From NCBI GenBank assembly GCA_965112155.1, contig OZ218107.1: 64,000 nt of DNA, one strand, 5' to 3'. The position numbers were made by a program, and so were the translations under genes. Origin of the DNA: Podarcis liolepis. Taxonomy: Eukaryota. The notes below the pieces were generated by a model. That model saw only the letters and a list, made by a program, of their open reading frames with translations, made no database searches and was not told where the DNA came from. This document shows, in pieces, positions 6,175 to 45,200 of the stretch. How positions within the stretch are numbered: the first letter of the stretch is position 1; each line of letters starts with the position of its first letter.

Positions 6175-6216
6175 ATGGAGACAACTAGCTTTGAAGGGGA
6201 GCCGGATAGAACTTCG
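6175..6216 (+). CDS. OSBPL8: Coding exon 1 (exon begins ~6129 in 5'UTR): [14 protein letters not shown]
   Basis: Acceptor ttttcttgatag at 6128 and donor TCG|gtaagt. Resembles recalled human MEGGLADGEPDRTS. Confidence 0.9.
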
Positions 6217-9200: not shown

Positions 9201-12200
9201 TAAAAGTAACCATGGAAGAAAGACTACACTACCCTCCCTTCAGAATGTATTGTTCAAAATCTCCCACAGCTAATTTTCTTCCTTAAGGAAGAACTCCCCC
9301 TACCCCTGTACTCATCTCTACTCCCCCTCCCAGTGGAAAAGCAGCTGGGGGAGACATGTTTGATCAAGGGGAGGAGAGGCGAAAATGAAGGCCAAGCAGC
9401 TCTTCCTCTGCTTAGACTGACAGCCTTTTACAGCAACTCTTGCTAACAGTTTTGATGTACTATTAGTAGTGGTTTGTGCCTGTCAGGTTTTAAATAATTT
9501 AAATGCATGGTGCAATTTTAAAACAATGCTTAATAATAACAAAGAATATTGTATAATTGTATCAGTATGTAATTTTATATCATTTAAGTGTGAACCCAAA
9601 GATTGTAGAATATCCCGTCTATGAGAGGAGTTCTATTCAGAGCTCTAGCTGAATGGAAATGGGAATCTTCTCATGATGTTCAGTTGCATTCTTCATCATG
9701 CTAAGACAACATGCCGGTTTAGAGGTATACCCAGGAGAGGTTGTGTAGCAACAAATGGAAATGGGAGTTGCACAGAAAGGACATTTGGTGGTGGTGGTGG
9801 TGGTGGTGGTACTGCTGCTTGGAGCAGTTGCCTCACTTTGCCTAATGTTGACTTGTCTCACTGTAGTTGAAGGAAGGGAGTATTTTTTAACCTTCATATT
9901 ATTCATCAAACGTTTTTCTCACCCACTTCCCCAAGGCTGCCTATGGACTACTCCCCCACTTCACCCCCCATTTTTTGGGTTACCCTGTTTTGCTTCCAAA
10001 CTGATATTCGTTCAGCTACCACAGTTTGCTATTGGAAGAAACTATTATGCTTAGTTGAAATCCATATTTTTAATAATATACTTGACAATATTGTATGCAT
10101 CTCCCTCATTAGAACAAGATTCCATTCTAACTCACTATATTTGATGTAGTATTATACAGTGTAATTTAGTTAGCTGTTGTCAACTGAAGGTAAAGACTTG
10201 ATTTTAAGTTCTGCAGCTACTTTCTACTATTAATAGATTGAATGAAAGTTAAACTTCCTTTATTGTAAAAGGCATCCCTTTTACAGTGGAAGTTGGTGTG
10301 TTATGTGATTGGATAAATGAAAAATAATTTTGAAAAGTATTTGTACTTCTGGAGAAATTAGTCATTCATTAACTGTAGCAAAGCTAATAATGGCCTGTTG
10401 CTAAGCGCACTTGTTTTGTTTTCTCTTGTTTTTTTTGGTGCTGTGTTGTTCTTAAGAAAATTAATCAGGAATGATGTGCATTTTTTATTTTTAGTTTCAA
10501 ACTAACATGCTGTTTCCCTTTCTCTCTCTTGCCTTTAATTGTGGCTGCCTCCTCTGCTATATTCTCCCTCTCCATTTTTGGCCTTGCTGCTTTTGTCTGC
10601 TGTTCTGCGTACTCAATTGCGCGTCACCTCAAGCATCATGATGAGATCAAAGACTGCCAGGGATCCTCAGGTAAGTAAATGATTTCTGCTACAACATGTG
10701 AAGAGCTATATTATCATATTCCCAGATCGTGACATGATTAGGTTCTTCCACGAGACACTGTCAAGTGCCGAGCTTTTAATGAATGATCAGACACAAAGTA
10801 GCAGAGGGAGGTGGAATAGCTGAACTACAGAAACTGTTCATTTGTGTGCAAGCACATGTGTGTGTACATGCGCACAAGCTTAAGTCTGCTGTGCCTTAAG
10901 AAAATAAACAAGAATGTGAAAATAGATGGGGCCTTAGGTTTTGTTTAAAGTTGGAAAACTAAATTTAAATCATTCTCAAAATGGAACACATATATATGGC
11001 TCTGTTGATTAGAGTATAATTTAGTCTGTACTATAGTGACTAGTAACCTTGTTCTGTTGGCGATAATCTCCCTGTTTTAATAGCAAAGTGGAAGCTAGTA
11101 GCCATCCATGTGATAGTAAACAGGTAAAAGATCTTGCAAATAGATAAAGCACAGAATTGTGTTGTTACATATTGACTTGCTGTCTTAAATATCTTTAGCT
11201 ATATTTGATTAGCTATTTTTTATTTAATTATTTAAATTTACTAAGGTTCTCTTGTGGGGTTATATCTCAGTATTCTGATTTTATTACAGCAGTGCTGTTG
11301 CTTGATGAAGGAAATCTTGTTCAATTAATCATCTGAGTTTTGCTTTAAATCTGCATAAGTTTGCATGTGAATAATGCAATAGTTCTGAAGAAAATTTCAT
11401 TGGCCTAGTTCACATGACCCAGTAAGCCGAACTATGGCTGTGGGTCACAGATGCTTTGCTTCTTCCAGCCTTTTTTATTCACATGTTTAGCATGCCACCG
11501 AAACCCAAGTGTGTGGTGAAGTTCTCTCCTAACTAGCCATGAGCTGTAGCCAGGGTTTATTCTTGTCTACAACTCAAAATTAACAAGATGAGAGCTTAAC
11601 TGTGAGCCCAGGTTTGAACACCACACTTTGCCAAACCGTGGATTAGCTCAGTGCAGTGTGGGAATAAAGAAGGACGAGAGAGAGAAGCAAAGAGGGATGA
11701 GCTCCTCTCCAGGAGCCTATGCAGTCCTGGTAAGCTCTAATTGGCTTACTGTGTAATGCAAAGAATCATGGCATTTTGGGGGGGCTAAACAGTGTGTTAC
11801 TTGATTTAAGCTTTTTTAAAAGTGTCCATAATGCTGCTGCTCCTATTTTGAAGAGAAAGCAGCTGAGAGGCCTTGATTCAGTAGCGTGTTCCTAATCCAG
11901 CCAGGGGTTCTTGCTAGAACCCAATATTGGAGAGATAAATGAAAAATATATAGGCAGCTATCAAATGTTTCTCTTGGGGCTATAAATAAGCAATATTTAG
12001 CACTACTCCTGTTGGAATACAATTAAAAGGAACTGCCTGCTAAAGTCTTCTCAGATAGCTGACACCATTCTGTTGAAGAGCTCTTCTCTTAACTAATTGT
12101 AACACACTACTATAGTGAGCAAGGTTGGCAAGCTCCTTTTTGTACTGGAAAAGTCTTGAGACATCATATGTAGAGAGTGAGATCCAAAGTTCCACACAAC

Positions 12201-15200: not shown

Positions 15201-18200
15201 TCATAGGCTTGTGCCTGAAATGATATTTTAAAGTTATCAGAGTGGCATGGGATGACCACATGGGGCAGCAAATCCCATTTTACTCTTAATAACACTGGAA
15301 GACATTCATATGTCTTTACTCATGAAATGTTGTAGGGAGTGAGGAATAGCATGTCCATTTTGAAGACTAATGTGTCCACCCTGATCTTCCCCCTCTTATA
15401 TCCAGTGCATCCCTTCCCTCAAATCCCACCATTTGTGTGAAGCCATTGGTGTAAGCCTCTCATTCCCATGCCATGCTGTAACTTGGCCTAAGCTCAACAA
15501 CTCCGGGGCATCCTCCCCCCCCCCAAAAGCTCAACTCTGGTAGACCACTGCCAGCTTTTTTAAATTGGAAGTAGATCGCAGTGTCTTGGGAATTGGACTG
15601 GCCTCCTATATACCCTGCCTTCGGTTTGTTCCCCTCCTTTGCTTCTCCTCGTGCATGGACCTGTACTCTGTAAAACACCGTGTGCAGTGAATAATTAATT
15701 AATAATCCTCTTTGTTTTTCAGGTGTGGTAACAAACAATGATGAAGCTCATGTTCTGAGTCCAGGAAAGATGAGCCAGCGTCAAGGAAAAGAAGGCTATC
15801 TTACTCCAACCAAAGATCTACAGCAGCCATCATTTAGTCCAGGAACAGTCCATGGCCATGGTAAGAAGCATTTCATTAGATGACTGGAATGTCAAACTGG
15901 ATAAAGGGTGGAATTCAACCTAGCCCTAAATAGATTGTTTCATCAGCAGAAGCTTTTCTGCTTGTCTGATTGAATAATCCCCTCCTCTCCCATTGTCCCA
16001 TGCTATTCTGGGAGTTCTCCCAACCTTCCAGAGCAGATCTGGGATAAGAGGAGGGAGGAAAGCTTCATTGTACCAATGGGAGCCCATACACAGGCTTCCA
16101 CAGCCCATAATGTCTTCAATAGTTACTGCAGCTCTTGCAGCAAATGTGTTCATCTACATGTCAGTAAAAACTGTTTAAAAATGTGGAATCCTTTGGATGA
16201 GCTGAAAATTGTTCTGTGTTCTTTGTCTCTCATCTGGTTCAGAAAATAATTTCTTACCTTAATAAATGTGTAAGTTTATATCTTCCCTTTTCAGTCTGCT
16301 GTTTAAGGTTGCATTTGTATGCATGTTAAAAGCATTTGTAAGACAGTTTTGTACACCATTAATGGCTATTCAGATTTCTGATTTTAAAAAATAGAATGAA
16401 GAGTCAAAAGGTTAAAAATTGGAATTTGTGCTTTGTACTGCCTGAAATTCCTTGCAGTTTGTGAATAGTTTCCACTCTTGCAATTCAGATTTGAATTGAT
16501 TAGAATGATTCTTAATAACAGAGAACACCAATTGGTTGAATTAATACCCTCTACATAAATTAGGGGGTGGGACCAGATATTGGTGGATTACAAATATACT
16601 CATTCCTTACCATTGAACTACCATTGACTGGGATGATGGGAAATGTCATCCAGTAACATTTGGAGGCTTGCAGATTAGTCTGCCCTTTGCTAAATAGTGT
16701 TCTCCTGTTCGTGCTTGCATGATCTCTGTCAGAGTAAACATACTGTAGGCTGTAAGGCTGCTATTCTGTGCACACTTACCTAGGAACAAGCCTCACTGCC
16801 CAAAATAACACTTCTGAGAAAATGCTAAGGATTTGGGCTGTAAATGCAATTCTACTTTTGGGGAATCTTTTCAGCTTTCTGATGCACAGATTGATAAAGA
16901 GAGAAACCTTAACTTGTGCTGTTGTGCTGCTCATTTTTTGTAGCAGAGATTATGCTTGCCAGGTTTCCAGGCCAAATGCAAGCTGAATAAACTACCAAGA
17001 AAATGGAAATATTTCAAATTTTCTAATTCCAATTACTATAGTTTTTGTTTCTTATCAAAATCATAGTGAGATGGGTTGTAAAGCAGCATTATGACGATTT
17101 TAGAGAATACTAAGCTTGAATGTGTTTGGTGCCATTACTTGCCCTTTCTTCCTTTTATCAGTTGTCACTACTAGCCCCTATGGCTAGTTACCCGTGGCTT
17201 TTATGGCAAGTTGTCTGTAGAATAATGTGTGTGTGCATATTGTTGTAAACTTATGCAGCCTTTTGGGGCAAAACTTGAAGAGAATGGGCAGGTAAAGCAA
17301 GCTGAATTTGGTATATAGAAAGTTGCAAGTTGGTTGTTTCTTTCTTCCTGTAACATTTCAGATTACTTAGAACAGCGATAGTCAACATTGTGCTCTCCAG
17401 AGATTGTTAGACTCCAACTCCCAAAAGCAGCGTCCAGCATGACCAGTAGACAGGGATGATGAGTGTTGTAGTCCAACAACATCTGGAGGGTTCCATGTTG
17501 GCATCCCTGACCTGTATTATAATTTATTTGTAGCGTTCATCATGGTTCATTATTCTTAAATAACGACAACTGTTTTGTCCCAGCAACCTGGTCTGAAACT
17601 CATTGTGTTGCTTAAGCATTTCCTGAGTGAGGACACTTCCAGTCTGTTGCCATTTTCAGGTGACCCTTCCAAGTCTACAATTCCATGATTCTTCTTTTCA
17701 AAGCTGTTTCTTTCTTCTTCACTCTGCCTTGGCACAGCCCCATCCTCACAAAAACAGAGTATCAAACAAAAAGGAAATGCCTGTGAGTGATAGGTCGAAG
17801 TAGGGCTTGATATTTACTGAGCAAACCAGAACAATTTGTTTTCATGAGATGAAAATGAAATGCCTGTGTAAATATTAACATTTGAGAAGTGATCAAATTG
17901 GTTCATCACTTACATACAGACGCCTCCTTAAACTATGTCTCTGGCAGAGGTATTGATGAGTTGAGATGTAAACTATATAGTTAACATCCTTATACCATAT
18001 GATACCAAAATTTAATATTACCATACTTAATTAAAGGAAATTTAGTATTCACAACATTTTGTGAAAATGTCATTCTGACATAATTTTTTAAAAAATTCAT
18101 TGAAAAAATACTAATCATTTATTTTTATTCCCCCTGCTTTTGGTCCCTGGATCCTCTGGGACTGACTTAGAGCCGTAGGAAGGACACACAGCCATATACA

Positions 18201-21200
18201 TATGGATACTCAAGTTCATATGGAGAAACGTGGTTGCTTTATTAACAGGCTCTCACAGCTTAGAGATGAAGTAAACATCTGCCAATTTTGCAGAATTGTA
18301 TCCTCAATGTCATACAACTTTCCAAGTGGTACAGTCCAAGGGAAGATTACATCTATTCACCTTCCACTGCATTGTAACATTCCCAGATCCAGTGACATGT
18401 CTCATTTTTGTAACCACCCTCCCTGTGTTTCCCTCTTTAGATTGCAAATTCACTTGTGAGACCAATTATGTTCTCCTACCCAAAATGGCAGGGCCCCCCT
18501 TCCCCTCTATCCACGGTACTTTCATGGGATATCCTATAAGCTTTTTATTTGCCGCTGCTCTCAGAATAGGTCATTTTTGGATCCATGCATTATGGAAGAA
18601 CTAACTTTGCTCCTCCCCACAGTAGTGGGAGCCAAAGGGGAATGCTGTGTTCTCAGAGGGTAGTTTCATTTCAGTTCCTTCAACCATGCTAAGCTTATTC
18701 TTTGGTGAAATCCATGTTTACAGATAGCAGGACAACTGGGTTTACTGAGAACAGCTGTATTGGTGTTTATGTGCTGGAAGTTTTCATTTTCTGTTACATT
18801 CCTCTCAAGACGGTTTGGTATCTAGACACTCACAAGTGTCATTTGTGCATTGGTATTTTTGATTTGTTAAGTACAAGAAAGGCTGATCAAGTCCTCCAGG
18901 ATTGTTACAGACTCTGAGGCAGTACCATACTTTTTCAAATTCAAGTATTGCTAGCTTACTGTGGAAGGAAGGCTGAATGTAGTCTTGTAAGAGAAAAATA
19001 GAGCTGATGTTCATTGGTTCTTGTTTGCAAGCTTTTTTTCCTCTGACTACTTTATTATTTTTAATCAAATCAAAGCACATGCCACATTTTAAGGGCACTT
19101 TTTCTTTAGCGCCAGCATAATCAATTCAGCACCATATTGTGAAAACCATGGATTTCCCTGTCTGATAATCCAGCTGAGTCAAAACAACCTTGATCTGCAT
19201 CAGAAAAAAAATAATCAAGTGCAGGACCAAGCACTGTTCTGCAACCTTTTATGGATCACATGAATTGAGTTTGTGATTTATAGGGCACAGTTTGAGGACA
19301 TCTACATCAACTCTTGCCACTATCTGCTTTTCAGCATTGGACCTTTTGATTGCATTTAATACAACAAAAACTGATGTTTGGAACCGACTTGACACAATTC
19401 TGATTCTTCAGAACAATAAACAACTTGAAGTTAAAAGCTGGCAATGTGGATTCAACTCTGACTTATTGTTACACATGATGTGGCAATGCCAGTAGTGGCT
19501 TTCTTCTTAGAAGAGATGTGCTTTCAGATAAATCATGTGAAAACTGGTCTAAGATTCTCCTACATGAATCTCTCTCTAAAATATTGAGTGGTCTGAGGCC
19601 TTTCAGAAGCCCACAAGAGGTAGATGTTCATGCCCTGCTATAGTTAAAATGGCTAGCACTCCAATACTTGAAGAACAAATCCTCTGCATCTGCTTACCAA
19701 AGAGTAGAAGTCTTGAGTGCTGCATCCTTTTGAGTGCATGGCATACCACCACCCATTGTCTCATAGGTACCTCTTCAATTCTGTGAACAGTTTTTTTCTT
19801 GTTGTAACTATTTTTGGCTCCTTTCCCCTGATAAGTGAACTCTTACTCTTCTTCCTTCCTTCCTTTCTATTGGATTTGTTTATTTGTGTCCTGTTTGTTT
19901 TATAAAAATATTGGAAATAAATATGACAGTAAACTTAAATTCTAAAATGTTAATTTCTGTTGGTCTCCTGTTTAAGTTTTTCTTAGAGATTGTGGCTGCT
20001 CAACTAACCATTTTGACCTTCTCTAATACATTACGTAGGCAGGAACATTCATATCGCTACTGTACAGCTGATGTCCAACATTTTAGACAACTATGTTTGT
20101 AAAATGCCTGCGTATATATTGCTATTTTTAAATTGGTAAACATTTATCAAGCTAGCAGAAAGCCAGCTCCATCTACTATATGGAAATTAAGAACAGTTTA
20201 TAGTTGATTCACATGTCTTTGAATGTAGTGCAATGCCTTTGAGTCATTACATGTTGCCGCATTTTCAATCTCAACAACCTCTGTACATACATATCTGACT
20301 GGTCTATAATGTAACACAGCAGCTCATTGACTAAAGTGTATTTTGCATTCTAAGTGAAGAAAATGATTTTACTGTGAGTAGAATTGTGGGTGCCAAGGGA
20401 TAAGGGAACAGTCCTTTAACTGGTAGGAACAACAGACCTAAGGAATTCTTACAGTATTGTAGTTTTGGGTCAATCTGTCTAACAGTACTATAGGGGAATG
20501 GAATGGAATGTGTTTTTTGTCAAATGTAGGTATTTGGGGAAATTTTATTTAAGGACTTTGTATGCCACCATTTCATTAAAAATATCAGGCTGTCTACACT
20601 CTAAAACATAGAAGATCAGAATTTAAAATACATATGCAGATAATCATTCAGGTGACAGACTAATAAAAAGTAAACAACTGTAGGCACAAAACATCTCTGT
20701 TGGAACAGTGTTCCATGGACTAGCAACACTAAATGTTCTAACTGTAGTCAGTCAGTCCTTTGTAACATTGGGGACAATTAACAGTGCTCCTCCAGATGAT
20801 TTCAGTGGTTCTGATGGTACACTGGACCCAATTCTTTAAGGGCTTTGTACAGGCAACTCGCAACTTATGTGGGGGGGATCTTGTTCCAGGGATAGCACAT
20901 AAAGCCAAAATCACATGCAACTCAAAAGATTTTCACCAGTTCCTAGAAAAGTGTGAAAACTATTTTAAATACCTCCCTTTTTCCTTTCAACTTGATGTTT
21001 TATTTCCTCAAACCCCAGAACATTGGGGCAAAGCATTGGACTAGAATATTTTTCATTTTCCTTTCAAACCATTATATCTTACTTTGATTGGGGGAGGGGG
21101 ACATCCGTGTATTGTACCAGTACATGTTTCTGTGCTTGCACAGTGTAAAATCCATTCACCACTAAAACATATGAAGGTGGTATCCACACGTCCTGTGACA

Positions 21201-24200
21201 TGTACAGTTCATAAGCTTTCTGCAGCTCTAACTATTCCATTCTTCTCAGATGGGATCCCTTTCATATACGGCTCTTTAAAAGATTGCCACCTTATGGTTT
21301 TTTTTGTTGATAATGACGGGAGTGGAACCAAGTTACAGAGTAGTCATTTAGATGCTGTGCAATACAGAATGGAGCATTTCAGACACGGCACAGCAAGGAT
21401 CTTGGATTTCAGCTTTTTCTTAATTTTGTAATTAAGGTTACCAAGACCTGCACTTTAGTAGCAGTAGTACTATATATATATATATGAATCAAATCAAATC
21501 AGGCTGCAGTTTCCCTTGCCTCACTGGGTGACAGGGCAACGCAATGGTAGATGAGAAAAAACAGTGTAAGTACATTGTAACAAAAGTCTAAACTGAGTCA
21601 AACACAAGTTTATAGAATTACACATGGTTTGGAGGAAGTAGATAGAGAAAAGTTTTTCTCATTACTCTAGAACTCCTGGACATTCAGTGAAGCTGAATGT
21701 TGGAAGATTTGGGACAGACAAAAGAAAGTACTGCATGCAGCACACTATGGAACTAGCCCCTACAGGAGGCAGTGATGGACACCAACCTAACAGAAGATTA
21801 GACAAATTCATGGAGGAGAGGGCTATTAATAGCTGCTAGCTATGATGGCTACGCTTTGCCTCCACAGTTGGAGGTAGTAATGTTACTAAATACCAGTTGC
21901 TGGAAACTACCGGAGGGGAGAATCCTGCTTGCAGGTTTCCCACAGGCATCCGGTTGGCTGCTGTGAGAACATAATGCCATTGGCTTAATCCGGCAGGCTC
22001 TTCTTACGTTCTTATACCATGCCTCATATTCTATCTAACCCCCCCTTCATGGTAAGCAAGCTCTCTGTGGGTCATTTGGGGATTGTCTGTTTTGCTGAAA
22101 CGGTCTAAACTAGTTTTAAAGTATCTACCAGAATGCATTGAGCAGAATTGTGTGTGTTGTGTCCAACCATTTTGATTGGGTATTAGCAGAGGAACCCTAT
22201 GTGTTAAGAGGCATCTGAATATGCACAGAGCAGTGGCAAGGCTGCTGCTGAGATCCTGTTTTCCTCTCTATATGTATTTGTTCACCCTGGATATATAATT
22301 AGAATAGAGCTTTTTGTCTTGGCTTATTGTTCTCTTGTTGTAAAGAAAGGACCTGTCAACAAATCTTTCTTTAGGAATTTTTGGCCAGTTTGACCCATTT
22401 GAGCCTAATCTGTTGTCCTTGTAATTCAGAGGTCTTGCTTGGGATAAAATAACTGAAACCTGAGTAGTCAACAAGTGTGTGGGAGGAGCTGTGGAACAGA
22501 GCAGTTTGAGATGCAAGCTGCTTTTATAAAAAGTGCCTGAGCTGTAACCCGGTGTACAGAGAGGAACTGCTTCAGGAGAAATTTAGATTGCATTGATTCT
22601 GTCAACCTTGGGGATACTGGTTTTTGGGTTGTAAAACAGTTTGCCATTCTTGTAATATACAGTTGTTTTGTGTTTTGGATTTCCATTCATGTGAGTTGGA
22701 GACACATCTCTAAAGGCAAGTATATCTCTAAATATATTTTAAGTTGGATTGCATATTACACAGCAGTAGCTTGATAGCTACTAGCAGCTGACTTTGTTTT
22801 CCAAACAAACTCATTGCATGAGGAAGGTCACATGTTGCACATAGATGTAGGTAATGCAGATTTAATTACAGGTTTCTTTCTTATGGTAGGTTTGTTGATG
22901 TAATAAGTTTGTGTGTTGTAGTGTTTAATCATATTAACCAGAAAAGTGGCTTGACAGTAGTGGGACTAATAAGCTGACTCTCCACAACACCACCACCTCA
23001 GGATGAACACAGAGTCACAAATTGATTTTGTGAGCTGTCTTGGATATCTAACACATTCTAATATCTGTTGCTGTTACAGCAGCAAAAGGATTAATTTTGG
23101 GGGGCCGGTTTCAAAAAGCCCTTATATTTCAAGTTGAGCATATGTCAAAGTTATGTCCTATTTTGCTCTTATTTCAGCTTATGTTTATTATTTTGAAGTA
23201 GAAAATTTGCATTTTTAACATGCAATTGAATTTTAATGTATTTCTAGATTAAAATTCATTGATAGCCAAATTAATGAGTGCGGCATATGTATAGCAATAT
23301 GCCATGTTACAGTACAATTAGCGCTATATGTTAAAATAACTAGTACTGATAGAATTCAAACCCATCTGAATAGCTGTCGGGAACAGAGCACCAAATATAT
23401 TTTGAAAATGAGCAATGATGTTTAATTTCAATAGTTTAAAAGCATCAGTTATTGGGAAACAACTAGGAGGAAGAGTTGTTGTACTCACGACTTGTTTGTA
23501 GACTTCTAGTCAGCCGCCGTGAGAACAGAATACTGGATTAGGTAGACTTTTTATCTGTTCCAACAAGGCTCTTTAATTATTCCTGTAATAATAATAATGA
23601 CTAAAATCATGCTGAATATCAAAACTGGTAATGTTCAGTAATGACCCCCTAGGGAATAATTTTTGGAAGCTGTTCTTTTAGATACAAATAAGCAATGAAC
23701 CATAATATGTGAATGTTATTTCTGCGTAACTGAAAACCAAAAAAGTCTATAAATACATCAGAAACTCTCAACATTTTCAGCTACACTGATTTTTGTAATA
23801 CTTAAAGGGAGAAACAAAAGGACAAAGAAAGATCAGTTACTTAAGCTTAGTGTTCTAGCCAAATGGTTAAAGTGATTTTTGTGGCAAAGCTCATGCCAAG
23901 AGAGTGACTTAGCAATGCTGAATACCTTTGTAATAACCTTACTTTGTATATGACACCAAAATGACTCTTCTTGTTAGGTATTCTGCATCAGTGTTGCTCA
24001 CCCCCATAGCCAAGACTCTTGTTCTTGATCTTCTTAGCTACAGTCTTGTAGCGAAGAATCTCCATCAGTTCAATTTTTGTGCAAGTACCAGGCAGTGTTG
24101 GGTGGGCATTCCCAAAGCAGGACTTGCAGACATCAGGGTCTGCAGTTCCATGCCCTGATTACCTGCAACGGCTGTTTCCCAGTCACATAACTCCTCACCC

Positions 24201-27200
24201 AAGTGAGTGGTGGCACTTCTGTATGGGGGCTGCTTAGCTCCCATATCCTTTCAAAGTGGGCGTTATAGAATCACCCAAATTCATTGTGGTTCCAATACAG
24301 AAATGCCACTTCCACCTGCTCTGGCAAGGACATGGGGGCAGTGGGTTAAGACATGGGGGTAGGGGGAGGTGAAAGTAATGAGGGGGAGGGGAGGGAAAGT
24401 TGGAGGAGGGAAAGGAGTGACCATGATTGGTACAGTCATGATAGAGTTGATGGGGAAGATTCTGAGAGGGTTTTTTTTGGGGGGGGGGGAGTTAATCTGG
24501 AGAGGGTGATCTTAAGTGGGAGGCAGTCATTTTGTGAATGGTTATGCATCAATAGCAGTGATTTTGTGGTTGTACCCTTGTCAGTTTTTCAAAATTCTGA
24601 ATGTGTCCTCAGGCCCAAAAATGATTAGGGAACCCTGGTATAAGGCTTTGAAAGTAATGGCTAACACATTTTGATTATTTTCACTGATCGCCTTCTGTAT
24701 TCATAGTCTTAATGACCCTGCAATCCTTACAATTTCTTTGCTCTTTGGGCTTCATTAGAATCTTGTATGGTTTTGTCTCACTGGCTGAACAATACCATCT
24801 TAATAGTGAACCTGAATTTTCAAGGTAGTAGTCACCAGAGTGGTTGAAGGGTTCCCCCTCCCCTGTTTTCTTTTACCAACAACCACTACAAATGTTTTTT
24901 ACTTGAAACAGATTATTTCTGTGTATACAATAATTGACACCCATTTGTTTTTTCCAGTATCCTGTGCAGAAACTATACTGTCAATTGTGTTTTCTGTGGA
25001 GTTTAACCATGCCTCAGTTGCATTTTAACGAGGTTTTGGAACAGTAGCCTATTTTCTTATAGCACAATCCTAACCATGTCTACTTAAAAGTATGTCCTAT
25101 TGAATTTAAGGGGGCTTACTCCCAGATAAGTGTAGTTAGGATTGCAGCCTTAAATGATCCAATGGTAAGATAACTTGTTTTTTGGTTCCTGAAACTTTGC
25201 ATTGCTTAAGTCGCCATGTTTCAGTATTTAAATCTTGTACTTTTACTGGAGTAAACTGGTGCACATATAAATGTAACAAATAAAATAATAATTGTTAAGT
25301 AGCTATCATTGTTGATTACCTTCTTGAATTTACCTTGGAGGAGCATCGATGATTATTTTTGCTGCTCTGCATGCATCTCTGTCTCAAATTGCTGTTCTTC
25401 TGGCTCTTTCTTCAGTTTGTCCCCTGCCAGACCACAAGATGGAGGGTGCTTTATCTTTACTATTTGTAATGAAGATTTTTCAAAATACTAACCCTTTCCC
25501 TAAAACATTATATTTAATTGCATTGAACAGGCAGCATATAAATGTCAAAGAATGAAATAAGTTTTGTTGTGAAAGAGTGCTGAGCCCGTTTTCTCCTCTA
25601 GAATCTTATGACTGCTGTGAGGTTCTTATGCCTTTCAATGCACCATGCATGAGTAAGAAGTATGAATTAACAGAGGAAGTAGCAAAAATAATAATCAAAA
25701 AATCCCAAGAATGGATGTTTGCCAAAAGCTGTGTGTTGTGGGTTATGGGAAAGAATAATAGAATATTGTTGGCACTGAAATGTGTTTCCACAGTGTAAAA
25801 AACAGTCTGCAAAGAGAACCATCATATTGACATAGGAATATGCAGTGGAAACAAATCACATTGCACTTTGTTCCTGCTGCCTTCCTGATGTAGAGAGTGC
25901 TCAGGAGGGTGGGGCAGCAAAAGAGGAAGGGGAGATAGAGATCAATAAAGAGATCAGGAAGAAGAAAAAGATAGATAGTGAGGAAGTTAGGCCTGGGAAT
26001 TTGGAGCAGGGATATAAGGAAAGGGGGAAAGATATGTAGGATTTTGATATAAGGCTGATATAAAAAAGCCTAGACAATGGAAATTGATACAAGGAGGATA
26101 TATGTAAAAGTTCACCACTTTATACCTGACAAATTTATTTATTTATTTAATAAATAAATAAAAACTAAGTTTGGGCAGTAGTGTTCCACTATCAGCTTTG
26201 GCCTGGAGATTTAAAAGTGGCATATTTGTGTCCTTGATGAACTGTTTCAGACTTCAAGTGAGGGCTCACGTGGTGGGAAGTTGCTCAAGTTTAAAAAACA
26301 CACACACACCTTGCCTATAGAAAGTTAGATGTTGCAAAGAAGGATTACAGTATAGCTTTGCCCCTGGTATGGTGCCTTTCTGTGTGTCAGAATTTTTTGT
26401 CATAATGGAACATTCCATCTTGCAAGTAAGTCTGTTTCTACAGCTAAAAGCAGAACATCACAGGCATGTATATATCTCGGCAAAACTAGGTCCGAGTGCA
26501 AACTGCCTTTCCAAGCAGGCATGCCAAATCACCAAGTGATTAGAGACCTCTTTAAGCAGAAATAAGCTACAGTAATAGGGATTAGTATGAGTGTTCAACA
26601 TGTGATGCCTGGGGGAAAATCTGTAGAAAATATTGGTGCTGTAGCATAGATGTAAAAAAACAACCAAACCACAACAACCCTCTGCTTCAGAATATTGAAT
26701 CAAAATTACATTACTTAATAACGATTATGCTTTCTCACCAGATATCTTCTGATTCATGTTTATCTATAATAATAATAATAATTTATTACTTGTACCCCAC
26801 ATCTTGACTGGATTGGCCCAGCCACTCTGGGCAGCTTCCAATAGAATATAAAACATACACGATACACCAGACATGAAAAGCTTCCTGATAGAGGGCTGCC
26901 TTCAGGATATCTATTGGAGGTTGTACAATTTGTTATCTCTTTGACATCTGATAGGAGGGTATTCCATAGGGTGGGTGCCACTACCAAGAAGGTCCTCTGC
27001 CTGGTTCCCTGTAACTTCACTTCTCACAATGGGGGAACCGCCAGAAGGCCCTTGGAGCCTGGACCTAAGTGTCCGGGCTGAACCATGGGGGTGGAGACCC
27101 TGTTTTTTTGAGTAGTTAAACCATATGACAGATTTGGGGTGCACTCCTTGTTGAATGTTTACCATCCATTAGTTTTTGCATGGCTAACAAGCGTATTATA

Positions 27201-30200
27201 GGGTAAAAGGCACTTACCAAGAAGGGCCGGTGGCAAGAGGGAGGGGAGGGAGAGGTGCTTAATCCTCCCATACTGGGTGATTTATTTTCACAAAGTTTCT
27301 TGGTTTTCTCTCTGTTGAGTTTATTTCCAGTTTCATGGCCTGGCTGGGGAGATACAAATTTTAAATAGCCAGTTGGGGTGTGTGTGTGGATTTGTAGGGT
27401 AGAACTGGTGGATAGAGAACTAGATACTAAATACTACTGTTCCCCAACCCCACTGATTTTCTCCTTCAGGTGCCTCCATTTCCCACTTTGGTGTTGCTAT
27501 GGAAACCATTGTTTCTCTTGTAACCTCTAGTTCCGTCCTTAGATCCCTACGCTCAAGAACAGGTTCTGTGGGTGTGTTAATATTATAATATGTATCATTA
27601 TAATAAATAGTGAAACCGCACTTTTTTTTCTTTTTAAATAGCATGACATTTCCCATTATTAAAGTGAAAAAATATAATGTGAGCCTTTGTGGTACAAAGG
27701 TTGTAACAGATTGTACATATGAGAACTAAGTTCTGTCATAGCTTTCAGTTAACAGTTTTCTAGCTGTTAAGGGGATCTAAGCTGTGTCCGTATGTAGAGT
27801 TATATGGATTTCACATACAGCGTGAGAAATTGAGAGTGAGATGCATGAAGAGTATCCAAAGCAGAATATCTTATTGCGGAATGCTGGCACTTTCTCACTT
27901 CTATACTGGAAAAGCAGGCAGGAGGGAAAGGAGTCTAACAGGATGTGTGTGACCTTCTGTGTGAGCTCAGAGGATGAGGATTCCCCATCAGGTCAGGGAG
28001 GGATGTATTAGTGGTTTGTGTTCTGTTAATGGGTCAGTACATTTGGTATCTAGTAATGAAAAGCAGGAGATCCAAAAGAATATGAATAGGATGATGGTGG
28101 GCCCTTCTTTTACACATATGCATACTCTCTCTCTTTGCCATTTTGGGAGACAGTAATTGTGTGAAAAGCAGGGTAAGAATATAGTAAATTAAATTAATAT
28201 ATTTTTATTGTATAGCTTAAACCTGACAGTTGCCAGATTTAAACGGAATTTTTTTTTTAAAAAAAAGTCTGTTATATGGTACAAATAGTTGGATCCAAGT
28301 CATTTCTGTTTTGTTAGTCAATGAGATTAAATAGTTTGAAATCTTAAGAATTTTCTTGATCCCCCCCCCAACAAGCTTTTAGATTTCTTGCTATATTTCA
28401 TTTCGTGAATTCAGGCAAAATGATGGCTTAAAAAAACAACCTTGGATCTCAGCTATAGAATATCTGTTGGTTTTTTTAATGACTCATCAAAGGAAGGAGA
28501 AATTGACTTGAAAGGGGATTTTTTGAATTAAAAATGTTGTATAAAGTTAGACATTCCGAATGGAAAGCAGGCAAAACTGACCACCTAACTAATTTGCATG
28601 ATGAGCAAGTGAAGCAGTCAAATGCTTGCAAAATTTTGAATGAAATTTAATTTTAAGCGTAAATTCTGTTTCAGTTGTTTCTATCAAAAGAGTTAGCCTG
28701 TGGTTTCTGAAGATAACATTTTTACTTATATTTATTGAGTATTGTTGTTGTGTAGTGTTGAGCAAATACCACAGCTTGTATTTAAACATGTTGAAAACAT
28801 GTTAAACTATTTAATGAAAAAAGTGACCCCCTTTCTCTGGAGTTGTTAATTATGTTAAAAAGCAAAGTCATCAATAAACACTTTACACTTTTTTGATACT
28901 TGTTACTCTGTGCTAAATTCTGGAAATTGCTGACGGAAGTTCTGACTCCTGTATCAGAAATTATTTTGGCAAGGGTCTATTTGGTGGTATTGCTTAAATG
29001 ATATGAGTTAGTGCCTGCCTTCTAAAATGTACCCTAATACTGCATTCAGAAGCAGTGCTTTTTCTTTCAGAGCCATTTATGTGAGTTCTTGCCGGCTAAT
29101 GCTATTTAATCCACAATAAAAAGTACTGAAAATAAATGGGTTTCCATTTAATGGAAATTCCTTCTCTGATTGTCAGTAGTACTCTTAATTTTCTTGAGTG
29201 AATTTTAGAAGTATACTCATAATTGTTCTGTGTGCAATAAAATAGAGCTTGAATGATTAGGCAGCCAAGGAATTTCTTGAATAACTCCTCCATTCTGATG
29301 TACTTTGTCATGACAGTTGTCTGATGCCTGCAAAACAATGAAGAGTAACAGCTTGTCTCGGGGCATGCTGACTGAAATATGACATGTTATTGATGGAGGA
29401 ATGGTAGCAGCTTGGATTGAATTCATAAACATCTCTTAGCTTGGTTACAAAGTTCAACAGCCTCTGGCATCTCTCCTTGTTCAAAATATGCACATGGCAC
29501 TTGATCTTTGTGAGTCTTGCATGCTGCTAATCTGAATGTGAAGGGAAAAGACTTTCTGCAACGTTCTTATTCCCGTCATCCTTCTGAATGAAAATAATCA
29601 TTACACAGAGCATCTAACTCATGAAGGCAGAAGGTCCACAGCGACGTAGGTTTTCTTCATGTGCTGGAGTTTCGCTGCCTCCACGGGCTGATGGTCGGAA
29701 ACTTGTCCGGAATGCTTCATTCGGAGGATACAATGCACTTTCACCAGTCTTCCGAGGTTTGTTTTGTCTCACTTTTTAATGTTCTCATGAAAATATTTCT
29801 TGTAAAAGCTTCTACAAATACTAATTTTTTTTAAAAAAAGCAATTTTCTAAGCTGAAAAAGCACCTGGATTCACGTTGAATAAAATAAAATGAGATTTGG
29901 AAATAATGATTCATGGTTGGCATGTGTTCTCGGGCAGCGCTTTCTTTAAGTTCAGCATTAAGAACAGAGTGCTTCATTGTCAATTGCGTGTGATTGTACA
30001 TGATGATGATGATATTATATAATGAGAATGATACTTGACTGAATATGGGTGGTGTTTTTCTTACCTGCAATTTAAGAGAATTTTCAACATACTGGAATCT
30101 ACAACCAAATGATTTTCAAGTTACCGGAACATGGCTTCTAATTAGGTGCAGGTCCTTTTGAAATCTGGAGTAGACAACATAGCAGGACTTTTGACTGTTA

Positions 30201-33200
30201 GAAGTAATCTTAAAATGTAAAATTTGAGGCCATGTTAATCAGTGTTGTGTGCTTTAATCCTTACATTCCTTAATAATAACTTGGAAATACTCATGTTGTA
30301 TATCTAGTTTGCATTGGTTCTAATGGACTTGATCAGTCTTGAAAATGCACAATTGCAAGGTTACTGTAAATGTGTGAGTTAGTACTACTGTAAAAATTGA
30401 TTTATTTAAGACAATTGCAAACTTCAAGCTAATTTGATTTTAATGTACCTATTAGTTGTCTACCTCTTCTTTTGTAGTTAGTAGTTTCAACACAAACATG
30501 ATGTGAATCCCCTGGAAACTAGAAATAACGCTCCCTCTTTTCATGTTTTTTTGTGTAAGTAATAAACGTTTATACAACAAAACAAAGGACAAGTAGATTT
30601 GCTGTACTTGAATAACTGCAGCTTCAGTCACTTATTGCAGAGTTCTGAATGTAACCACAACATCGCATGTTTCCTTTTCATAGTTTGGTTTTCAGGATAT
30701 CTAAACCAAGCCAGTAAGTTGCATAACAACTCTTGTAAGGAAGTATGTTGTTATTTTTACTGAGTTTTTGCCATATCTTACTAAAAGTCCAGTTTGGCAT
30801 TTAGAGTGGTTTAATACTCACAGATGACAAAGTGAGATGTATGTGTGCTAGTTCTCAAATTCAAGACAGTGTAGTTAACTTAGGTACTGCAAACTTACCT
30901 TAATTATAGCCTTTTACATGAATTATCTGGGCGAGGGAAACACAATATCTGTCATTATGTACTTCATGCTGTTGAATATGTCAGTAGTTGGCATTTGATT
31001 CACATTCCTTCTTTCTTTTTTAAAACCAGTTTATGTGCGTGTAACTTGCTCACTGACTTTGTATGAAGAGTAGAGCACCCTAGACATTAATTGTGGTGTC
31101 ATGAGCCCCATTCTCTAGACATATCACAAGGTACATGAATGCTTGGAGCAGTAAGATGTTGCGCACTGGCCCTTGCCCCTTGGCCACACAAATGTCCAAA
31201 GAAAGGCTGTGCATGTAGAAGTTGCTGCCAAATCTCAGTTAATCCCAAATTGTTCTAGGGAGTTTACCAGGAAGATAACATTTGAAATTCCTGAGGAATT
31301 TCTGATTAAGATAAGTGAATTCACTTGCCGCTTTGAAGAATGTAGTTACTCCAATCTGCCTTTATTAACGCAATGAGTTGAAACGGCTTGTTAGCACTAC
31401 TCTCCTTACTTGGCTTTGCACAAGCTCTGCTTCATTCTGTTTTATGCTCCATTGATTAGTTCACATCCCTGGATGTGTGTGGTGGTATGGTGTGAATATG
31501 ATAATGCCTAATCCTAGTGGCTTACTCGATCATGAATTTATTATTAGATTCCACTTCCATCTTATTTTTCTGATGCCTGATGAGAAGGCTTTGCATTGTT
31601 GGAACTGCTGTAACCTGGGGATGGGCTGGCAAGCCAGTTCTCCTATGGACTGAAACTCTCTGTGCTTATCTATATTGTGCTACGTGCTACTAGTACTGTA
31701 GTTGGATATTTTCATATAACTGAGTAACTGAGGTACCTCTGAATGCCTGGAAGGTAAAATACAAATGTATTAAATTGGGACAGGGTTGATAACTACCATT
31801 CATGCTTTGAACTTTGTAGGTTGGGAACATAACCACTTTTGGACCCTAGGTCTCACACAACATGGCTTTAATATTAAACAAAAAAAATCCTAGTTGTAGA
31901 GGAATTACAGAAACATTTGGTGAACAAATGGTGACATATACACCATGTCCCTAAGTATATTTGGTCAGTTTTAATAGCTTTGTCTTATTTAGGATTAATG
32001 GCAAATGGGATACACTGATTTTTTGCAACCATTTCAATTTCTCTTCAAGGTTTTGACAGAGGGAAGGATGATGCCTCACAAAGTAAAGATGATTCTACGC
32101 AATCAATGTCAAAAAGCAAGGTGAGCACCTTAACCTTCAGACGGCATAGTTCAGTTTGATGCATCTAAGTGAGCTTGGATACGTAGTTGCAATTAATTTA
32201 ATCTTTTCCCTACCTATCTCATTTGTGGCTTAGTGTAAATAGTAAGGTGAATTATGTTTATGTGTAATCTTTGGTTATAGCACAAAAGCAGGCACTGATA
32301 TTTGTTTTTAAAGCCAGTTTGTGAAAAAAAGTGAGGGCTGCTCAGGAGATGCAGTGGGCCTTTGGTGAATTTTATTAGCTACTCGGTTAAGTATGAGGCA
32401 TATTATTTTAGATGAACTAGCCATAGCTGGCAATAGGCATTGGAGCCTCCAGTGACAAGGCAGAATCCACAAGTAAACCTGCAATTTATGTGCATTTCAC
32501 TTGTGCTCATTCAGCTTTACATGCATGTCAATTAAAAAATAGAAAGGGGGTGGGGTTCTGGGGAAAATGACTTTGGCAATCCTCTCTGCCGTTGAATCCA
32601 ATGAATTTTGACTATACATGATTTTGGTTTTAGGCGCAATCCCCAGAACATAGCCCCCAGGTAAGTTGCGGGTTCTACTGTACTACTACATGCTATATGT
32701 TTTATGGTGAGTGCAACTCACACTTGAACAAGATACAAACTACCAAGCCATAGAACCCTTCTCAGGGTTCAGGCTTGGTTTTTGGCTCCCATCCAGACCA
32801 CCCACTCGTCCCGTCCCCCCAGGCACAAGTTCAGCTTCTGAACAGCTTCATCTGCTTCTGTTGGAAAAGATATAGAGCAGAGTGCCTTGATGATGACTCA
32901 TCCTTTGATGATGGCACGCAATGACTTCACTTAGGTGTTAAACAGCATGGAAGACAGAATTGATCCCCACAATATAATTCCCATGGGAACAAACAGAAAT
33001 CTCCCAGAGCGGTTCTCTAAACTTGGGCCATCAAATAGGGACAGAACCACAGTAATACACTGCCTCCAACTTCTGTTGAATGGAGCCAGTCCATGAGGAT
33101 ACCATGGTCAATGGTATGAAAAGCCATTGAGAGCTCAAGGAGAATCAACAAGGTTGGAGTTCCTCTCCTCATACAAATAAAAAGCCAAGGTGACCAAAGC

Positions 33201-42200: not shown

Positions 42201-45200
42201 CACACTGTGACTGTAGCACTCAATTCAAAGATAAATTATTGCAATGATTCCTTTAATTACAGTGTTGTAGCTGTACAAACATTTCTGTATTAACTCATAT
42301 TGATGTATTTTGCAAGAAATGCTATATATTTTAATACTAAAATGTTATCTACAATTTTAATTGGCAAGCTTAGTACATTCTTAATTTGATCACTATGTAT
42401 TTTTAAACAGCTAAAATGGAAAGTATGGATTGTTTCTCTGAGTCTATGGGGTAAGGTCTGCTATAAAACCTAAGCAAAAACATACAATTGCAGTCTAAGC
42501 TGTAGTAATTGCAGTTCTTTTTATATGCATAGTTACTTGGTTAGTGATAAAGTAATGATGCTATAGTATAAACAGAGGTAAAACCATATGAAAAAGTTTA
42601 GGAATTGATGTTGCATAAATTAAAACTTGGGATAGATCCCAGTCAAATTTAAGTGTTCCTGTGTCCCACTCATTTAAATGTGCTTTTAATTTTTCCGTTG
42701 AGACTGAAAAGTGCTTAAATTTGACTTTATCGTGCCTAATGTTTACTGAACTGACCAATCAAAAGCCATAAGCTGAGTTGAGTTGCTAAATTGTATAAAG
42801 GAAAGCCCCAGGATTGAAACCTATCTCTTCTTTTTTAAGGCTAAATGATAGTGAAATCGAAAGGCATCACTTCAAAGATCCAGATTTGTATTCTGATAAA
42901 TCAGATAGGGAAAATGATCATGATCGCGATGAATCGGATAATGATGGCTTGGGAGAAAGTGACACTGACACATCTGAGCGGCAGGATGACTCGTACATTG
43001 ACCCTGAACCTGATCATATCAAGGAAACAACGTATTTGGAAGAAGTTCATGAAGAGCTTGGAGAGGTTAAAAAAAAGGGGGGGGTTTATGCAGTAGTAAT
43101 GTTTAGGTTTTAATATTTTGAAACTAAAATTGTACCTTGGAAAGGCAGTCATTCTGGCAATATTTGAATTGCAAAATGGTTTCCTTTGCCTTTTTATCAC
43201 ACACTTTCTTGTCTTATGTCCCTCTAGCTGTAGGTCAGTTTTCAGACCACTGGTAGATTAATTGCTTTGGTAGGTTAATTTTTAAAGCATATCTAAGCAT
43301 AAGAGGCCACCATAAAAAGCAAAAGAAACTGGTAGGATTTGGCCAAGGGACTATGGTTGGCTAAAGTTGATGCAGATTTAGAAATAACTTGACAAATCGA
43401 AACGCTAAGAGCCAGACAGTCACCTGAACCGACCCAAAGGTAAACAGAGATTATTCTAGATTGACAACTGATAAGAGCAGCAAGGACATGCCCAAGGGCA
43501 TTAATCAAGGTGAAACAGAAATTTTGAATCTCATGGTTGAGTTGGAAGTTGTAGTGTGTTGCAGGTTATCTAGCCTTGGTTTGATAAATAGCTATTTGGT
43601 GTTTTTTTAAAAATAGTTCACATTTCCTAATTGCAGCATGTGAATTGCTTCACATGTTATATTTTGGCCCTTGCTCATTCAGGGTTGCAGGCTCCGGGTT
43701 TTAATTTAAAAAACCAAAACTGCTTAGGGATAAATTGCCCAGAGTTGAGTCAATTGGAGTGCTTTCTCTTAAGTTGTTCTTTGGAGCATTATGTATTTTT
43801 GATGGGTGGGTGAAGCAAGTTTACGGACAAACATGGGCTCTGACCAATTCAAAATAAATATTAATTCATCCCGTGTCATAGAGAAGGCATTGGCAATTTT
43901 GAACCACGGTGACTGAAACCAAATACCTTCTGCAAATGTGCTCTTTAAATTAGTATCATGTTTATGTTCTATTCTGCTTTGTTGTTGTTGAAGGCAGGAG
44001 AAGCTTCCCAAACAGAAACAGTATCAGAAGAGAACAAAAGCTTGATATGGACATTACTAAAACAAGTACGCCCAGGAATGGACCTCTCCAAGGTGGTGCT
44101 GCCCACGTTTATTTTGGAAACACGTTCTTTCTTGGATAAACTCTCTGATTACTACTATCATGCAGACTTCTTATCTGAGTGAGTTGATTTCATTCCTCTA
44201 CAATAAAAACTAACTGGATGTATCCGCTCAGTATTTTGTTTTCAGAAGCATTTTTTAACATTGCTTTCTGAATAAGTTGTAAAACATGTCAGGCCTGCAA
44301 TAAGTCATACTTCTAGCCCCTGGAATTTTCCCTTCTTTTGTGGGGCTTACCTTTAAAGTCCTAAGTACCTTGGGATTCATGTACCTGAAGGAGTGTCTGT
44401 ACCCACACCAACCTGTCCAGGTCTTGAGAGCACCAAGAAAGGTGCTGATCCAAGTACTGCCTTTAGTTAGGGGTTTGTTATGGTTTTTACAAGGTAAAAA
44501 GGTAAAGGTACCCCTGCCCGTACGGGCCAGTCATGTCCGACTCTGGGGTTGCATGCTCATCTCGCTCTAGAGGCCGTGAGCCAGCGCCGTCCGAAGACAC
44601 TTCTGGGTCACGTGGCCAGTGTGACGAAGCTGCTCTGGCGAGCCAGCACCAGTGCAGCACACGGAAACGCCGTTTACCATCCCGCGATAAAGCGGTACCT
44701 ATTTATCTACTTGCACTTAAGGGTGCTTTCGAACTGCTAGGTGGGCAGGAGCTGGGACCGAAGATGGGAGCTCACCCCGCCGCGGGGATTCGAACCGCCG
44801 ACCATACGATCGGCAAGTCCTAGGCACTGAGGTTTTACCCACAGCACCACCCGCAGAGGGCCTTTTATGCTTTAGACTTTGCCCTGACTTTAGAATTTCT
44901 TTCTAAAGGACTTCACATAGCAAATTTTTCAGTGTTGTGAGAAGGCTTTCTTATTTGCTCAGGCATTTTAGCGTTGTTATTATTTCTAGTTTGTACACAA
45001 GATTTTTTTTGAGTTTTAACTTGTTTTGTCTTCTGCCTTGTTATATATATTTACTGGCTTTAAATTTTATTTCCATCTTCTATTTGAATTAGTTCTTATT
45101 CACACTTTTGTACACTGCTCTTTATTGTGTACAGACAAGATCTGCTTTTTACTCTATCCACATGTTAATAGTTTTGAAATTTTATTGTACATTGTTCTTT

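What the first reader, a model, noticed from the sequence alone, without database searches (positions are those of the whole stretch)
29609..29756. Hidden ORP5-like basic N-terminal exon inside OSBPL8
Seen: a 136-nt ATG-to-donor stretch, too short for the ORF track, encodes [45 protein letters not shown](G). It ends in phase 1 and joins exon 32050 in frame (predicted 862 aa). Recalled knowledge: the paralog ORP5 starts MKEEAFLRRRFSLCPPSSTPQKVDPRKLTRNLLLSGDNELYPLSPG, which aligns without gaps at about 22/46 identities. The N-terminus is known to tune plasma-membrane engagement of ORP5/ORP8, with the acidic ORP8L leader dampening it. Inference: OSBPL8 retains the ancestral pre-duplication start exon and can make a third, ORP5-like isoform with a basic leader. 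The leader carries RRxS (PKA), RxRxxS (Akt-type) and LxRxxS motifs, suggesting phospho-switchable ER-PM contact targeting. It may already exist as a predicted isoform in databases.
Basis: partly seen in the sequence, partly recalled or inferred. Interest (0 to 1): 0.85.

Follow-up and report, generated by a model that had tools for sequence, protein, structure and literature searches.

The report
ORP5-like alternative start exon of OSBPL8
A small, rarely used exon inside the lipid-transfer gene OSBPL8 gives the protein an arginine-rich start matching that of its sister gene ORP5; it is real and conserved from sharks to this reptile-like genome, but gene predictions in fish and shark already contain it.

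Summary
Window 29609-29756 (+) is a 148-nt exon: AG acceptor, in-frame TAA, ATG at 29621, GT donor at 29757, ending in phase 1. It joins the common OSBPL8 exon, which is 32050-32120, in frame.

RNA of a close relative (about 2-3% diverged) carries the 29756->32050 junction: one contig, plus 2 raw reads against 12 from the canonical exon. A second run shows 0 against 8. The isoform is real but minor.

The 45-residue leader matches ORF fragments and gene models from shark, sturgeon, teleosts and unnamed vertebrates at 61-79% identity. NCBI models in Sinocyclocheilus, Tachysurus and Rhincodon already join it to the ORP8 body.

It aligns without gaps to the first 46 residues of ORP5 from birds, fish and a mammal-like source: 19-24 of 46 identical, pairwise E about 1e-11. 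A start exon older than the ORP5/ORP8 split is well supported.

Leader charge is +7, against +1 for the ORP8S leader and -6 for the ORP8L-specific part.

Translation, membrane targeting and phosphorylation are untested inference. Reviews describe only ORP8L and ORP8S.

So this is known to annotation but undescribed functionally, and of moderate interest. Mammals were not checked.

The parts
22686..22715 (+). 3' end of an upstream non-coding exon that is spliced onto 29609 in the relative's RNA. Its 5' end and transcription start are unknown. The donor in this window reads AAG|GCAAGT, a GC donor.
   Evidence: in run X2, 28 loose letters lie before 29607; they match only 22686-22713, with 3 mismatches; sequence context.
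29424..29429 (+). TATA-like CATAAA, 23-28 nt upstream of where the unspliced X1 contig begins (29452). This may mark a second, exon-proximal start. Weak evidence.
   Evidence: sequence. X1 contig 29452-29756, depth 16.8, collinear with the genome. Contig ends are not mapped transcript starts.
29609..29756 (+). Alternative OSBPL8 exon: 12 nt of leader containing an in-frame TAA, then coding sequence from ATG 29621 to 29756 (45 codons plus 1 nt, phase 1).
29621..29755 (+). Coding part: a 45-residue ORP5-type leader with 9 basic and 2 acidic residues. It carries the RRRFS core and the [15 protein letters not shown] block.
32050..32120 (+). Common OSBPL8 exon (G)FDRGKDD...SKSK. It accepts either the canonical exon ending at 15860 or the alternative exon ending at 29756.
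   Evidence: joint 29756->32050, and loose ends before 32049 that read the end of the 15860 exon..

Best explanation
Window 29609-29756 is a genuine, evolutionarily old alternative 5' coding exon of OSBPL8 (ORP8). Transcripts start downstream of the ORP8L and ORP8S start codons. They begin either at an upstream non-coding exon near 22.7 kb or just upstream of the exon itself.

These transcripts open at ATG 29621 and splice in phase 1 onto the common exon 32050-32120. The acidic ORP8L leader and the near-neutral ORP8S leader are thereby replaced by a 45-residue arginine-rich leader. This leader is the orthologue of the first coding exon of the paralogue ORP5. The rest of the protein is unchanged: polybasic segment, PH domain, lipid-transfer domain and ER anchor.

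Shown here:
- the exon anatomy;
- the splice junction in RNA of a close relative;
- conservation of the peptide in ORP8 loci from shark to teleosts and tetrapod-like sequences;
- homology to the ORP5 start.

Inferred:
- The isoform is translated.
- With the ORP5-type arginine cluster in place of the acidic tract, it engages the plasma membrane more readily than ORP8L, and damps ORP5 less.
- The RRFS serine, invariant in all 20 aligned sequences, and the ORP8-specific RNAS serine are basophilic-kinase sites that could tune this.

In the tissues sampled it is a minor form, roughly 0-15% of junction reads.
For: - Anatomy and frame.
- Junction 29756->32050 with GT..AG ends: X2 contig at depth 10.9, and 2 raw reads with 2 distinct starts in X23. 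The X1 contig 29452-29756 stops exactly at the donor.
- Constraint between the two close species: 0 differences in 148 exon bases. The laid intronic pieces show about 2-3% (4 differences in the 157 bases just upstream, 5-17 per 200-300 bases elsewhere).
- Deep conservation: 18 phmmer hits at 61-79% identity, from Acipenser, Thunnus, Scophthalmus, Scleropages, Cynoglossus and Chaenocephalus, plus more unnamed clusters.
- In ORFs that run on into the intron, similarity stops right after the closing Gly, i.e. at the donor.
- The same architecture (leader, then the FDRGK/FERK/LDKGR exon, then the PH domain) occurs in NCBI models P0027, P0030 and P0060.
- ORP5 homology: BLASTP 21/43 at E 5e-11 (bird ORP5-like) and 23/43 at E 2e-11 (P0039). 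In a 20-sequence alignment R, R, S of RRFS, then R.L.RN, two G and the closing G are invariant.
- Charge: +7, against +1 (ORP8S leader) and -6 (ORP8L-specific part).
- Literature: the acidic ORP8 N-terminus reduces membrane binding and inhibits ORP5. ORP5 has 'a cluster of basic arginines' there instead (PMC5940310). Only ORP8L and ORP8S are described, though up to three ORP8 bands are seen on blots (PMC7356933).
Against: - Usage is low: 2 of 14 junction reads in X23, 0 of 8 in X24, and contig depth about 11-17 against 136-256 for the common exon. Depth over the exon is only about 3 times the intronic background.
- The RNA comes from a relative about 2-3% diverged, not demonstrably from the window's own species.
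- The ATG has a weak context (C at -3, A at +4). The unspliced long leader carries five upstream ATGs.
- The upstream non-coding exon has a GC donor and 3 mismatches in 28 bases in this window, so its use here is unproven.
- This lineage departs from the vertebrate consensus at otherwise conserved positions: MKAEG for MKEEG, NAL for NEL, FRG for xPG. A near relative's ORF (P0005/P0020) begins only at the residue before RRRFS. Constraint may be relaxed.
- There is no protein-level evidence.
- The exon that follows (32050-32120) is charge-neutral by count but rich in Asp. The net effect on membrane binding is not obvious.
Confidence: 0.85

Rival explanations
1. The exon is a relic. It was the ancestral ORP5/8 start exon and may still be used in fishes. 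In this lineage it is only spliced at noise level, with no functional protein made. Any remaining role would be regulatory, as an unproductive transcript.
For: - Low usage, only about 3 times the intronic background.
- Weak start context and upstream ATGs.
- Lineage-specific departures from the consensus, and loss of the first seven codons in P0005/P0020.
- If the exon were included after the canonical exon ending at 15860 (phase 1), the frame would reach a TAG after 13 codons. This is read from the sequence.
Against: - The open frame, start codon, splice sites and the RRRFS and [15 protein letters not shown] cores are all intact.
- There are 0 differences in 148 bases against the relative, where about 4 would be expected from the intronic rate.
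- No read joins 15860 to 29609.
Confidence: 0.12
2. The isoform is made, but the arginine cluster does not act through plasma-membrane lipids. Instead it acts as an arginine-based ER retention or partner-binding signal, possibly masked by phosphorylation of the adjacent serine.
For: Only the motif itself: RRRFS is invariant in both paralogues, and ORP5/8 are ER-anchored with a cytosolic N-terminus (PMC7356933). The analogy to arginine-based signals comes from general knowledge and was not tested.
Against: Published work ties ORP5/8 N-terminal charge to plasma-membrane association (PMC5940310). Nothing here points to COPI or 14-3-3.
Confidence: 0.1
3. A chance open frame in an intron, with a chance resemblance to ORP5.
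For: A 45-codon ATG-to-GT stretch is common in 64 kb of intron-rich DNA (one search lists 307 ORFs of 45 aa or more).
Against: - E 1e-11 against 1.84 billion proteins.
- Collinear tblastn hits.
- The splice junction in RNA.
- Annotated orthologous isoforms.
Confidence: 0.01

Closest known systems
First coding exon / N-terminal leader of ORP5 (OSBPL5)
   Same: - It starts at Met1 with MKEE-type residues.
- It has the RRRFS arginine cluster, the RKL.RN block and the GG.N block, and ends in a Gly.
- It has the same length as the window's leader, so the alignment is ungapped with 19-24/46 identities.
- It lies ahead of the polybasic segment and the PH domain.
   Different: - ORP8-lineage copies carry DGRKL[IV][11 protein letters not shown], including a conserved Ser absent from ORP5. 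Most have a 2-3 residue insertion that the window lacks.
- In ORP8 the leader is followed by the Asp/Ser-rich FDRGK exon. In ORP5 a Pro-rich segment follows.
- In ORP5 this is the main start. In OSBPL8 here it is a minor alternative.
ORP8L and ORP8S, the two described N-terminal variants of ORP8
   Same: The principle is the same: different 5' exons joined to a common body change the charge of the extreme N-terminus. That charge is known to set plasma-membrane engagement (PMC7356933, PMC5940310, PMC5624964).
   Different: The new leader shares no sequence with either variant and is far more basic: +7, against +1 for the ORP8S leader and -6 for the ORP8L-specific part. It needs its own transcription start downstream of both known start codons.
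Predicted ORP8 isoforms in public annotation: P0027 (ORP8-like, Sinocyclocheilus rhinocerous), P0030 (ORP8 isoform X5, partial, Tachysurus ichikawai), P0060 (ORP8-like, Rhincodon typus)
   Same: The same leader sits at residue 1 and is joined to the same next exon and then the PH domain. These are orthologues of the isoform predicted here.
   Different: They come from other species. They are computational models without functional study. The leaders are 50-65% identical to the window's.

Membership tests
Exon of OSBPL8 (alternative 5' coding exon) | Lies within the gene, on its strand, between known exons | tested here: met
   ORP8 fragments map collinearly to 15719-15860, 29621-29758, 32050-32120, 34281-, 36244-, 37486- and onward to 57503, all on the + strand.
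Exon of OSBPL8 (alternative 5' coding exon) | Canonical splice sites and a frame-preserving join to the next exon | tested here: met
   AG|exon|GT; 136 coding nt, so phase 1; the next exon starts in phase 1.
Exon of OSBPL8 (alternative 5' coding exon) | The spliced junction is present in RNA | tested here: met
   joint 29756->32050 in one X2 contig (depth 10.9) and 2 X23 reads. The source is a close relative, and usage is low.
Exon of OSBPL8 (alternative 5' coding exon) | Own transcription start (a true first exon or its own promoter) | tested here: inconclusive
   One search shows two leader forms. One is spliced from 22686-22715. The other is collinear back to at least 29452 (29315 at background depth). 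No start was mapped, and there is no CpG island.
ORP5-type N-terminal leader (shared ORP5/ORP8 start exon) | Significant alignment to ORP5 residues 1-46, anchored at the start Met | tested here: met
   E 5e-11. E 2e-11; tblastn on the window, E 3.5e-7; 19-24/46 identities, no gaps.
ORP5-type N-terminal leader (shared ORP5/ORP8 start exon) | Present in both paralogues across jawed vertebrates, so it predates the duplication | tested here: met
   ORP8 copies: whale shark, sturgeon, arowana and several teleosts. ORP5 copies: birds, teleosts and a mammal-like fragment. Among the fragments returned, invertebrate ORP5/8-like sequences lacked the motif, but many of them are N-terminally incomplete.
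ORP5-type N-terminal leader (shared ORP5/ORP8 start exon) | Same exon boundary and phase in the OSBPL5 gene | not testable with these tools
Expressed protein isoform of ORP8 | Translation from ATG 29621 and a detectable protein | not testable with these tools
   No ribosome-profiling or proteomic data were to hand.
Basophilic-kinase phospho-switch | Consensus motifs present and conserved | tested here: met
   - RR[FL]S is invariant in all 20 aligned leaders.
- L.R..S (RNAS) is conserved in all ORP8 copies and absent in ORP5.
- S13 of the Akt-type motif is not conserved.
Basophilic-kinase phospho-switch | Actual phosphorylation, with an effect on localisation | not testable with these tools
   This needs experiments.

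The most novel reading that the evidence does not exclude
The ORP5-type start exon is kept under purifying selection in OSBPL8 of all jawed vertebrates, mammals included. It encodes a third, regulated ORP8 isoform. This isoform engages ER-plasma membrane contacts constitutively, like ORP5, and is switched by phosphorylation of the invariant RRFS serine. It could account for the third ORP8 band noted on blots (PMC7356933). It would also mean that ORP8's 'reserve' behaviour is set by promoter choice.
Probability: 0.3. Interest if true: 0.6.

Novelty: already known. Interest (0 to 1): 0.35.

Why it matters
ORP5 and ORP8 exchange phosphatidylserine for PI4P or PI(4,5)P2 at ER-plasma membrane contacts. 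Their different behaviour is attributed largely to the charge of their N-termini. If OSBPL8 can make a conserved form with the ORP5-type arginine-rich start, the simple ORP8L/ORP8S picture is incomplete. Promoter choice could then convert ORP8 from a damped partner that needs high PI(4,5)P2 into an ORP5-like one.

The evolutionary point is solid: one ancestral start exon, kept as the main start in ORP5 and as a minor alternative in ORP8. It does not appear in the reviews I could read.

The exon is not new to sequence databases, however. Its function remains untested, and its presence in mammals was not examined here.

Tried and rejected
- **PDB and Pfam.** No match for the leader in either. 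It belongs to no described domain and is probably disordered.
- **Full-length isoforms.** The length rule of the search for homologous proteins (0.55-1.75 times the query) meant only fragments of 37-373 aa could be reached. Full-length isoforms of about 860 aa were therefore not retrieved, for this clade or for mammals.
- **DNA of other species.** I got no DNA for the unnamed Logan fragments, could not name their species, and could not compute dN/dS.
- **Unplaced loose ends.** Two other loose ends in run X2, before 29264 and before 29825, match nothing in the window. They are probably insertions or divergence in the relative. I left them unexplained.
- **Literature.** Searches for a third ORP8 isoform, for an OSBPL8 alternative first exon, and for the peptide strings found nothing relevant.
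- **P0021.** It is listed in the same 90% cluster as P0003 but is an unrelated bacterial enzyme. I ignored it.
- **Cassette use.** Inclusion of the exon after the canonical exon ending at 15860 was considered and rejected for this species. The frame hits a TAG after 13 codons, and no such junction was seen.
- Mammal-type ORP8 fragments turned up (P0034, P0049, P0101). I did not pursue them and looked up no human sequence.

Full report
**What is in the sequence**

The window carries most of a vertebrate OSBPL8 (ORP8) gene on the + strand. The named exons are:
- the ORP8L start, ATG at 6175 ([14 protein letters not shown]);
- a 37-nt exon ending at 10670;
- exon 15723-15860, which holds the ORP8S start (ATG at 15770);
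- the common exons from 32050 onward, down to the C-terminal anchor ending at 57506.

The candidate lies in the 16-kb intron between 15860 and 32050. It reads: AG acceptor at 29607-8, exon 29609-29756, in-frame TAA at 29615-17, ATG at 29621, 45 codons plus one G, donor GT at 29757-8 in a good GAG|GTTTGT context. The lone G joins GT of the next exon to make Gly, and the frame continues as FDRGKDD.... The next exon is 32050-32120, not 32121.

**Is it used?**

One call of read laying on 28600-32400 used two runs of assembled contigs (X1, X2) and two of raw RNA-seq reads (X23, X24), from three studies, all with one species label. That organism differs from the window by about 2-3% in the intronic pieces, so it is a close relative or a divergent individual.

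- The runs are RNA. Exon 32050-32120 has depth 136-256 against 2-7 in the intron. Its contigs continue into the neighbouring exons.
- The 29756->32050 junction (GT..AG) is present in an X2 contig (depth 10.9, 148 exon bases with no mismatch, then 31 bases of the next exon). It is also in two X23 reads with different starts.
- At the same acceptor, 12 X23 reads and 8 X24 reads come from the canonical exon ending at 15860. Usage of the alternative is therefore about 0-15%.
- An X1 contig (depth 16.8) runs collinear with the genome from 29452 and stops exactly at 29756.
- An X2 contig carries 28 foreign letters in front of 29607. They match only 22686-22713 of the window.

So two leader forms exist. 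One is spliced from a non-coding exon near 22.7 kb. The other is probably started close to the exon: a CATAAA sits 23-28 nt before 29452. Neither start is mapped. No read joins 15860 to 29609, and such a join would run into a TAG after 13 codons.

**Is it conserved?**

phmmer of the 45 residues against 1.84 billion proteins gave 18 hits at 61-79% identity, the best at E 1e-11. The named ones come from sturgeon, tuna, turbot, arowana, tongue sole and icefish.

Further searches added several unnamed clusters from sequencing-run assemblies. They also added three NCBI gene models in which the same leader sits at residue 1 and continues into the same next exon and the ORP8 PH domain:
- P0027, 'ORP8-like', Sinocyclocheilus;
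- P0030, 'ORP8 isoform X5, partial', Tachysurus;
- P0060, 'ORP8-like', whale shark.

In ORFs that read on from genomic DNA, similarity ends right after the closing Gly, where the donor lies. Between the window and the RNA source the exon has 0 differences in 148 bases. The intronic rate predicts about four. This is modest additional support for constraint.

**Is it ORP5-like?**

ORP5 N-terminal fragments came: two birds, three teleosts and one mammal-like sequence.
- BLASTP of the window's peptide gives 21/43 identities at E 5e-11 against Corvus ORP5-like.
- It gives 23/43 at E 2e-11 against P0039. Both alignments are ungapped and begin at the start Met.
- tblastn of P0039 on the whole window finds 29621-29758 for its residues 1-46, collinear with the PH-domain exons.
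- In a 20-sequence alignment the invariant positions are the RR.S of RRRFS, then R.L.RN, two G and the terminal G.
- ORP8 copies share an extra signature, DGRKL[IV][11 protein letters not shown].

An exon that starts both paralogues in cartilaginous and bony vertebrates is best explained as the start exon of their common ancestor. The invertebrate ORP5/8-like fragments returned lacked the motif. Many of them are incomplete at the N-terminus, so this says little.

**How it probably works**

The leader has 9 basic and 2 acidic residues (+7). The ORP8S leader is +1 and the ORP8L-specific 42 residues are -6.

Published work supports the link between N-terminal charge and localisation:
- The acidic N-terminus of ORP8 lowers liposome and plasma-membrane binding and lets ORP8 inhibit ORP5.
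- ORP5 has 'a cluster of basic arginines' in that place (PMC5940310).
- ORP8S is more cortical than ORP8L (PMC7356933; PMC5624964).

It is therefore reasonable, though unproven, that this isoform behaves more like ORP5. The invariant serine after the arginines is a plausible basophilic-kinase site in both paralogues. The RNAS serine is specific to ORP8. The Akt-type S13 is not conserved.

Points against strong expression:
- the weak start context (C at -3, A at +4);
- five upstream ATGs in the long leader;
- the GC donor of the 22.7-kb exon in this window;
- departures of this lineage from the vertebrate consensus, with a near relative's ORF (P0005/P0020) beginning only just before RRRFS.

**Novelty**

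A 2020 review lists two ORP8 variants only and remarks on occasional third bands. My literature searches found no description of this exon. Public gene predictions do contain the isoform in fish and shark.

I therefore rate it as already known to annotation. The evolutionary reading is correct but unpublished, and the functional reading is untested.

**Limits**

- Full-length isoforms lay beyond the length window of the protein search.
The new leader is 15 residues longer than the ORP8S leader.
- Mammalian and human sequence was not examined.

Noticed in passing
window 32634-32660 (+): A 27-nt in-frame microexon (TTAG|...|GTAAGT) encoding AQSPEHSPQ. It is inserted between exon 32050-32120 and the SESKLYNG exon in a sizeable share of reads: X23 6 against 9 without it, X24 3 against 8. 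It is also in X1 and X2 contigs. It adds two Ser-Pro sites just ahead of the polybasic segment.
   Followed up: partly
window 22686-22715 (+): Non-coding exon end spliced to 29609 in the relative's RNA. In this window its donor is GC (AAG|GCAAGT) and it differs at 3 of 28 bases. The window has an ATG-TGA mini-ORF at 22689 that the relative lacks.
   Followed up: partly
window 6175-6216, 10634-10670, 15723-15860 (+): Leader exons of ORP8L and ORP8S. The 37-nt exon ([12 protein letters not shown]) is needed to keep the ORP8L start in frame.
   Followed up: partly
window 29264 and 29825 (+): X2 contigs carry 255 foreign letters before each of these places. The letters match nothing in the window. 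They are probably insertions or rearrangements in the relative's intron.
   Followed up: partly
window 26760-27165 (-), also about 249-449 and 44533-44823 (+): ORF-like repeat copies (e.g. ...[11 protein letters not shown]...VKEI...). From memory they resemble a dispersed element common in squamate reptile genomes. If so, the window comes from a lizard or snake. Not tested.
   Followed up: no
P0002 (Acipenser), P0007 (Thunnus), P0029 (Caranx), P0016 (Scleropages): In these gene models the leader exon is read in frame after the MSQRQ exon, as an internal cassette with extra residues before the Met. They are ab initio models. In the window's species the same arrangement would be out of frame.
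   Followed up: no
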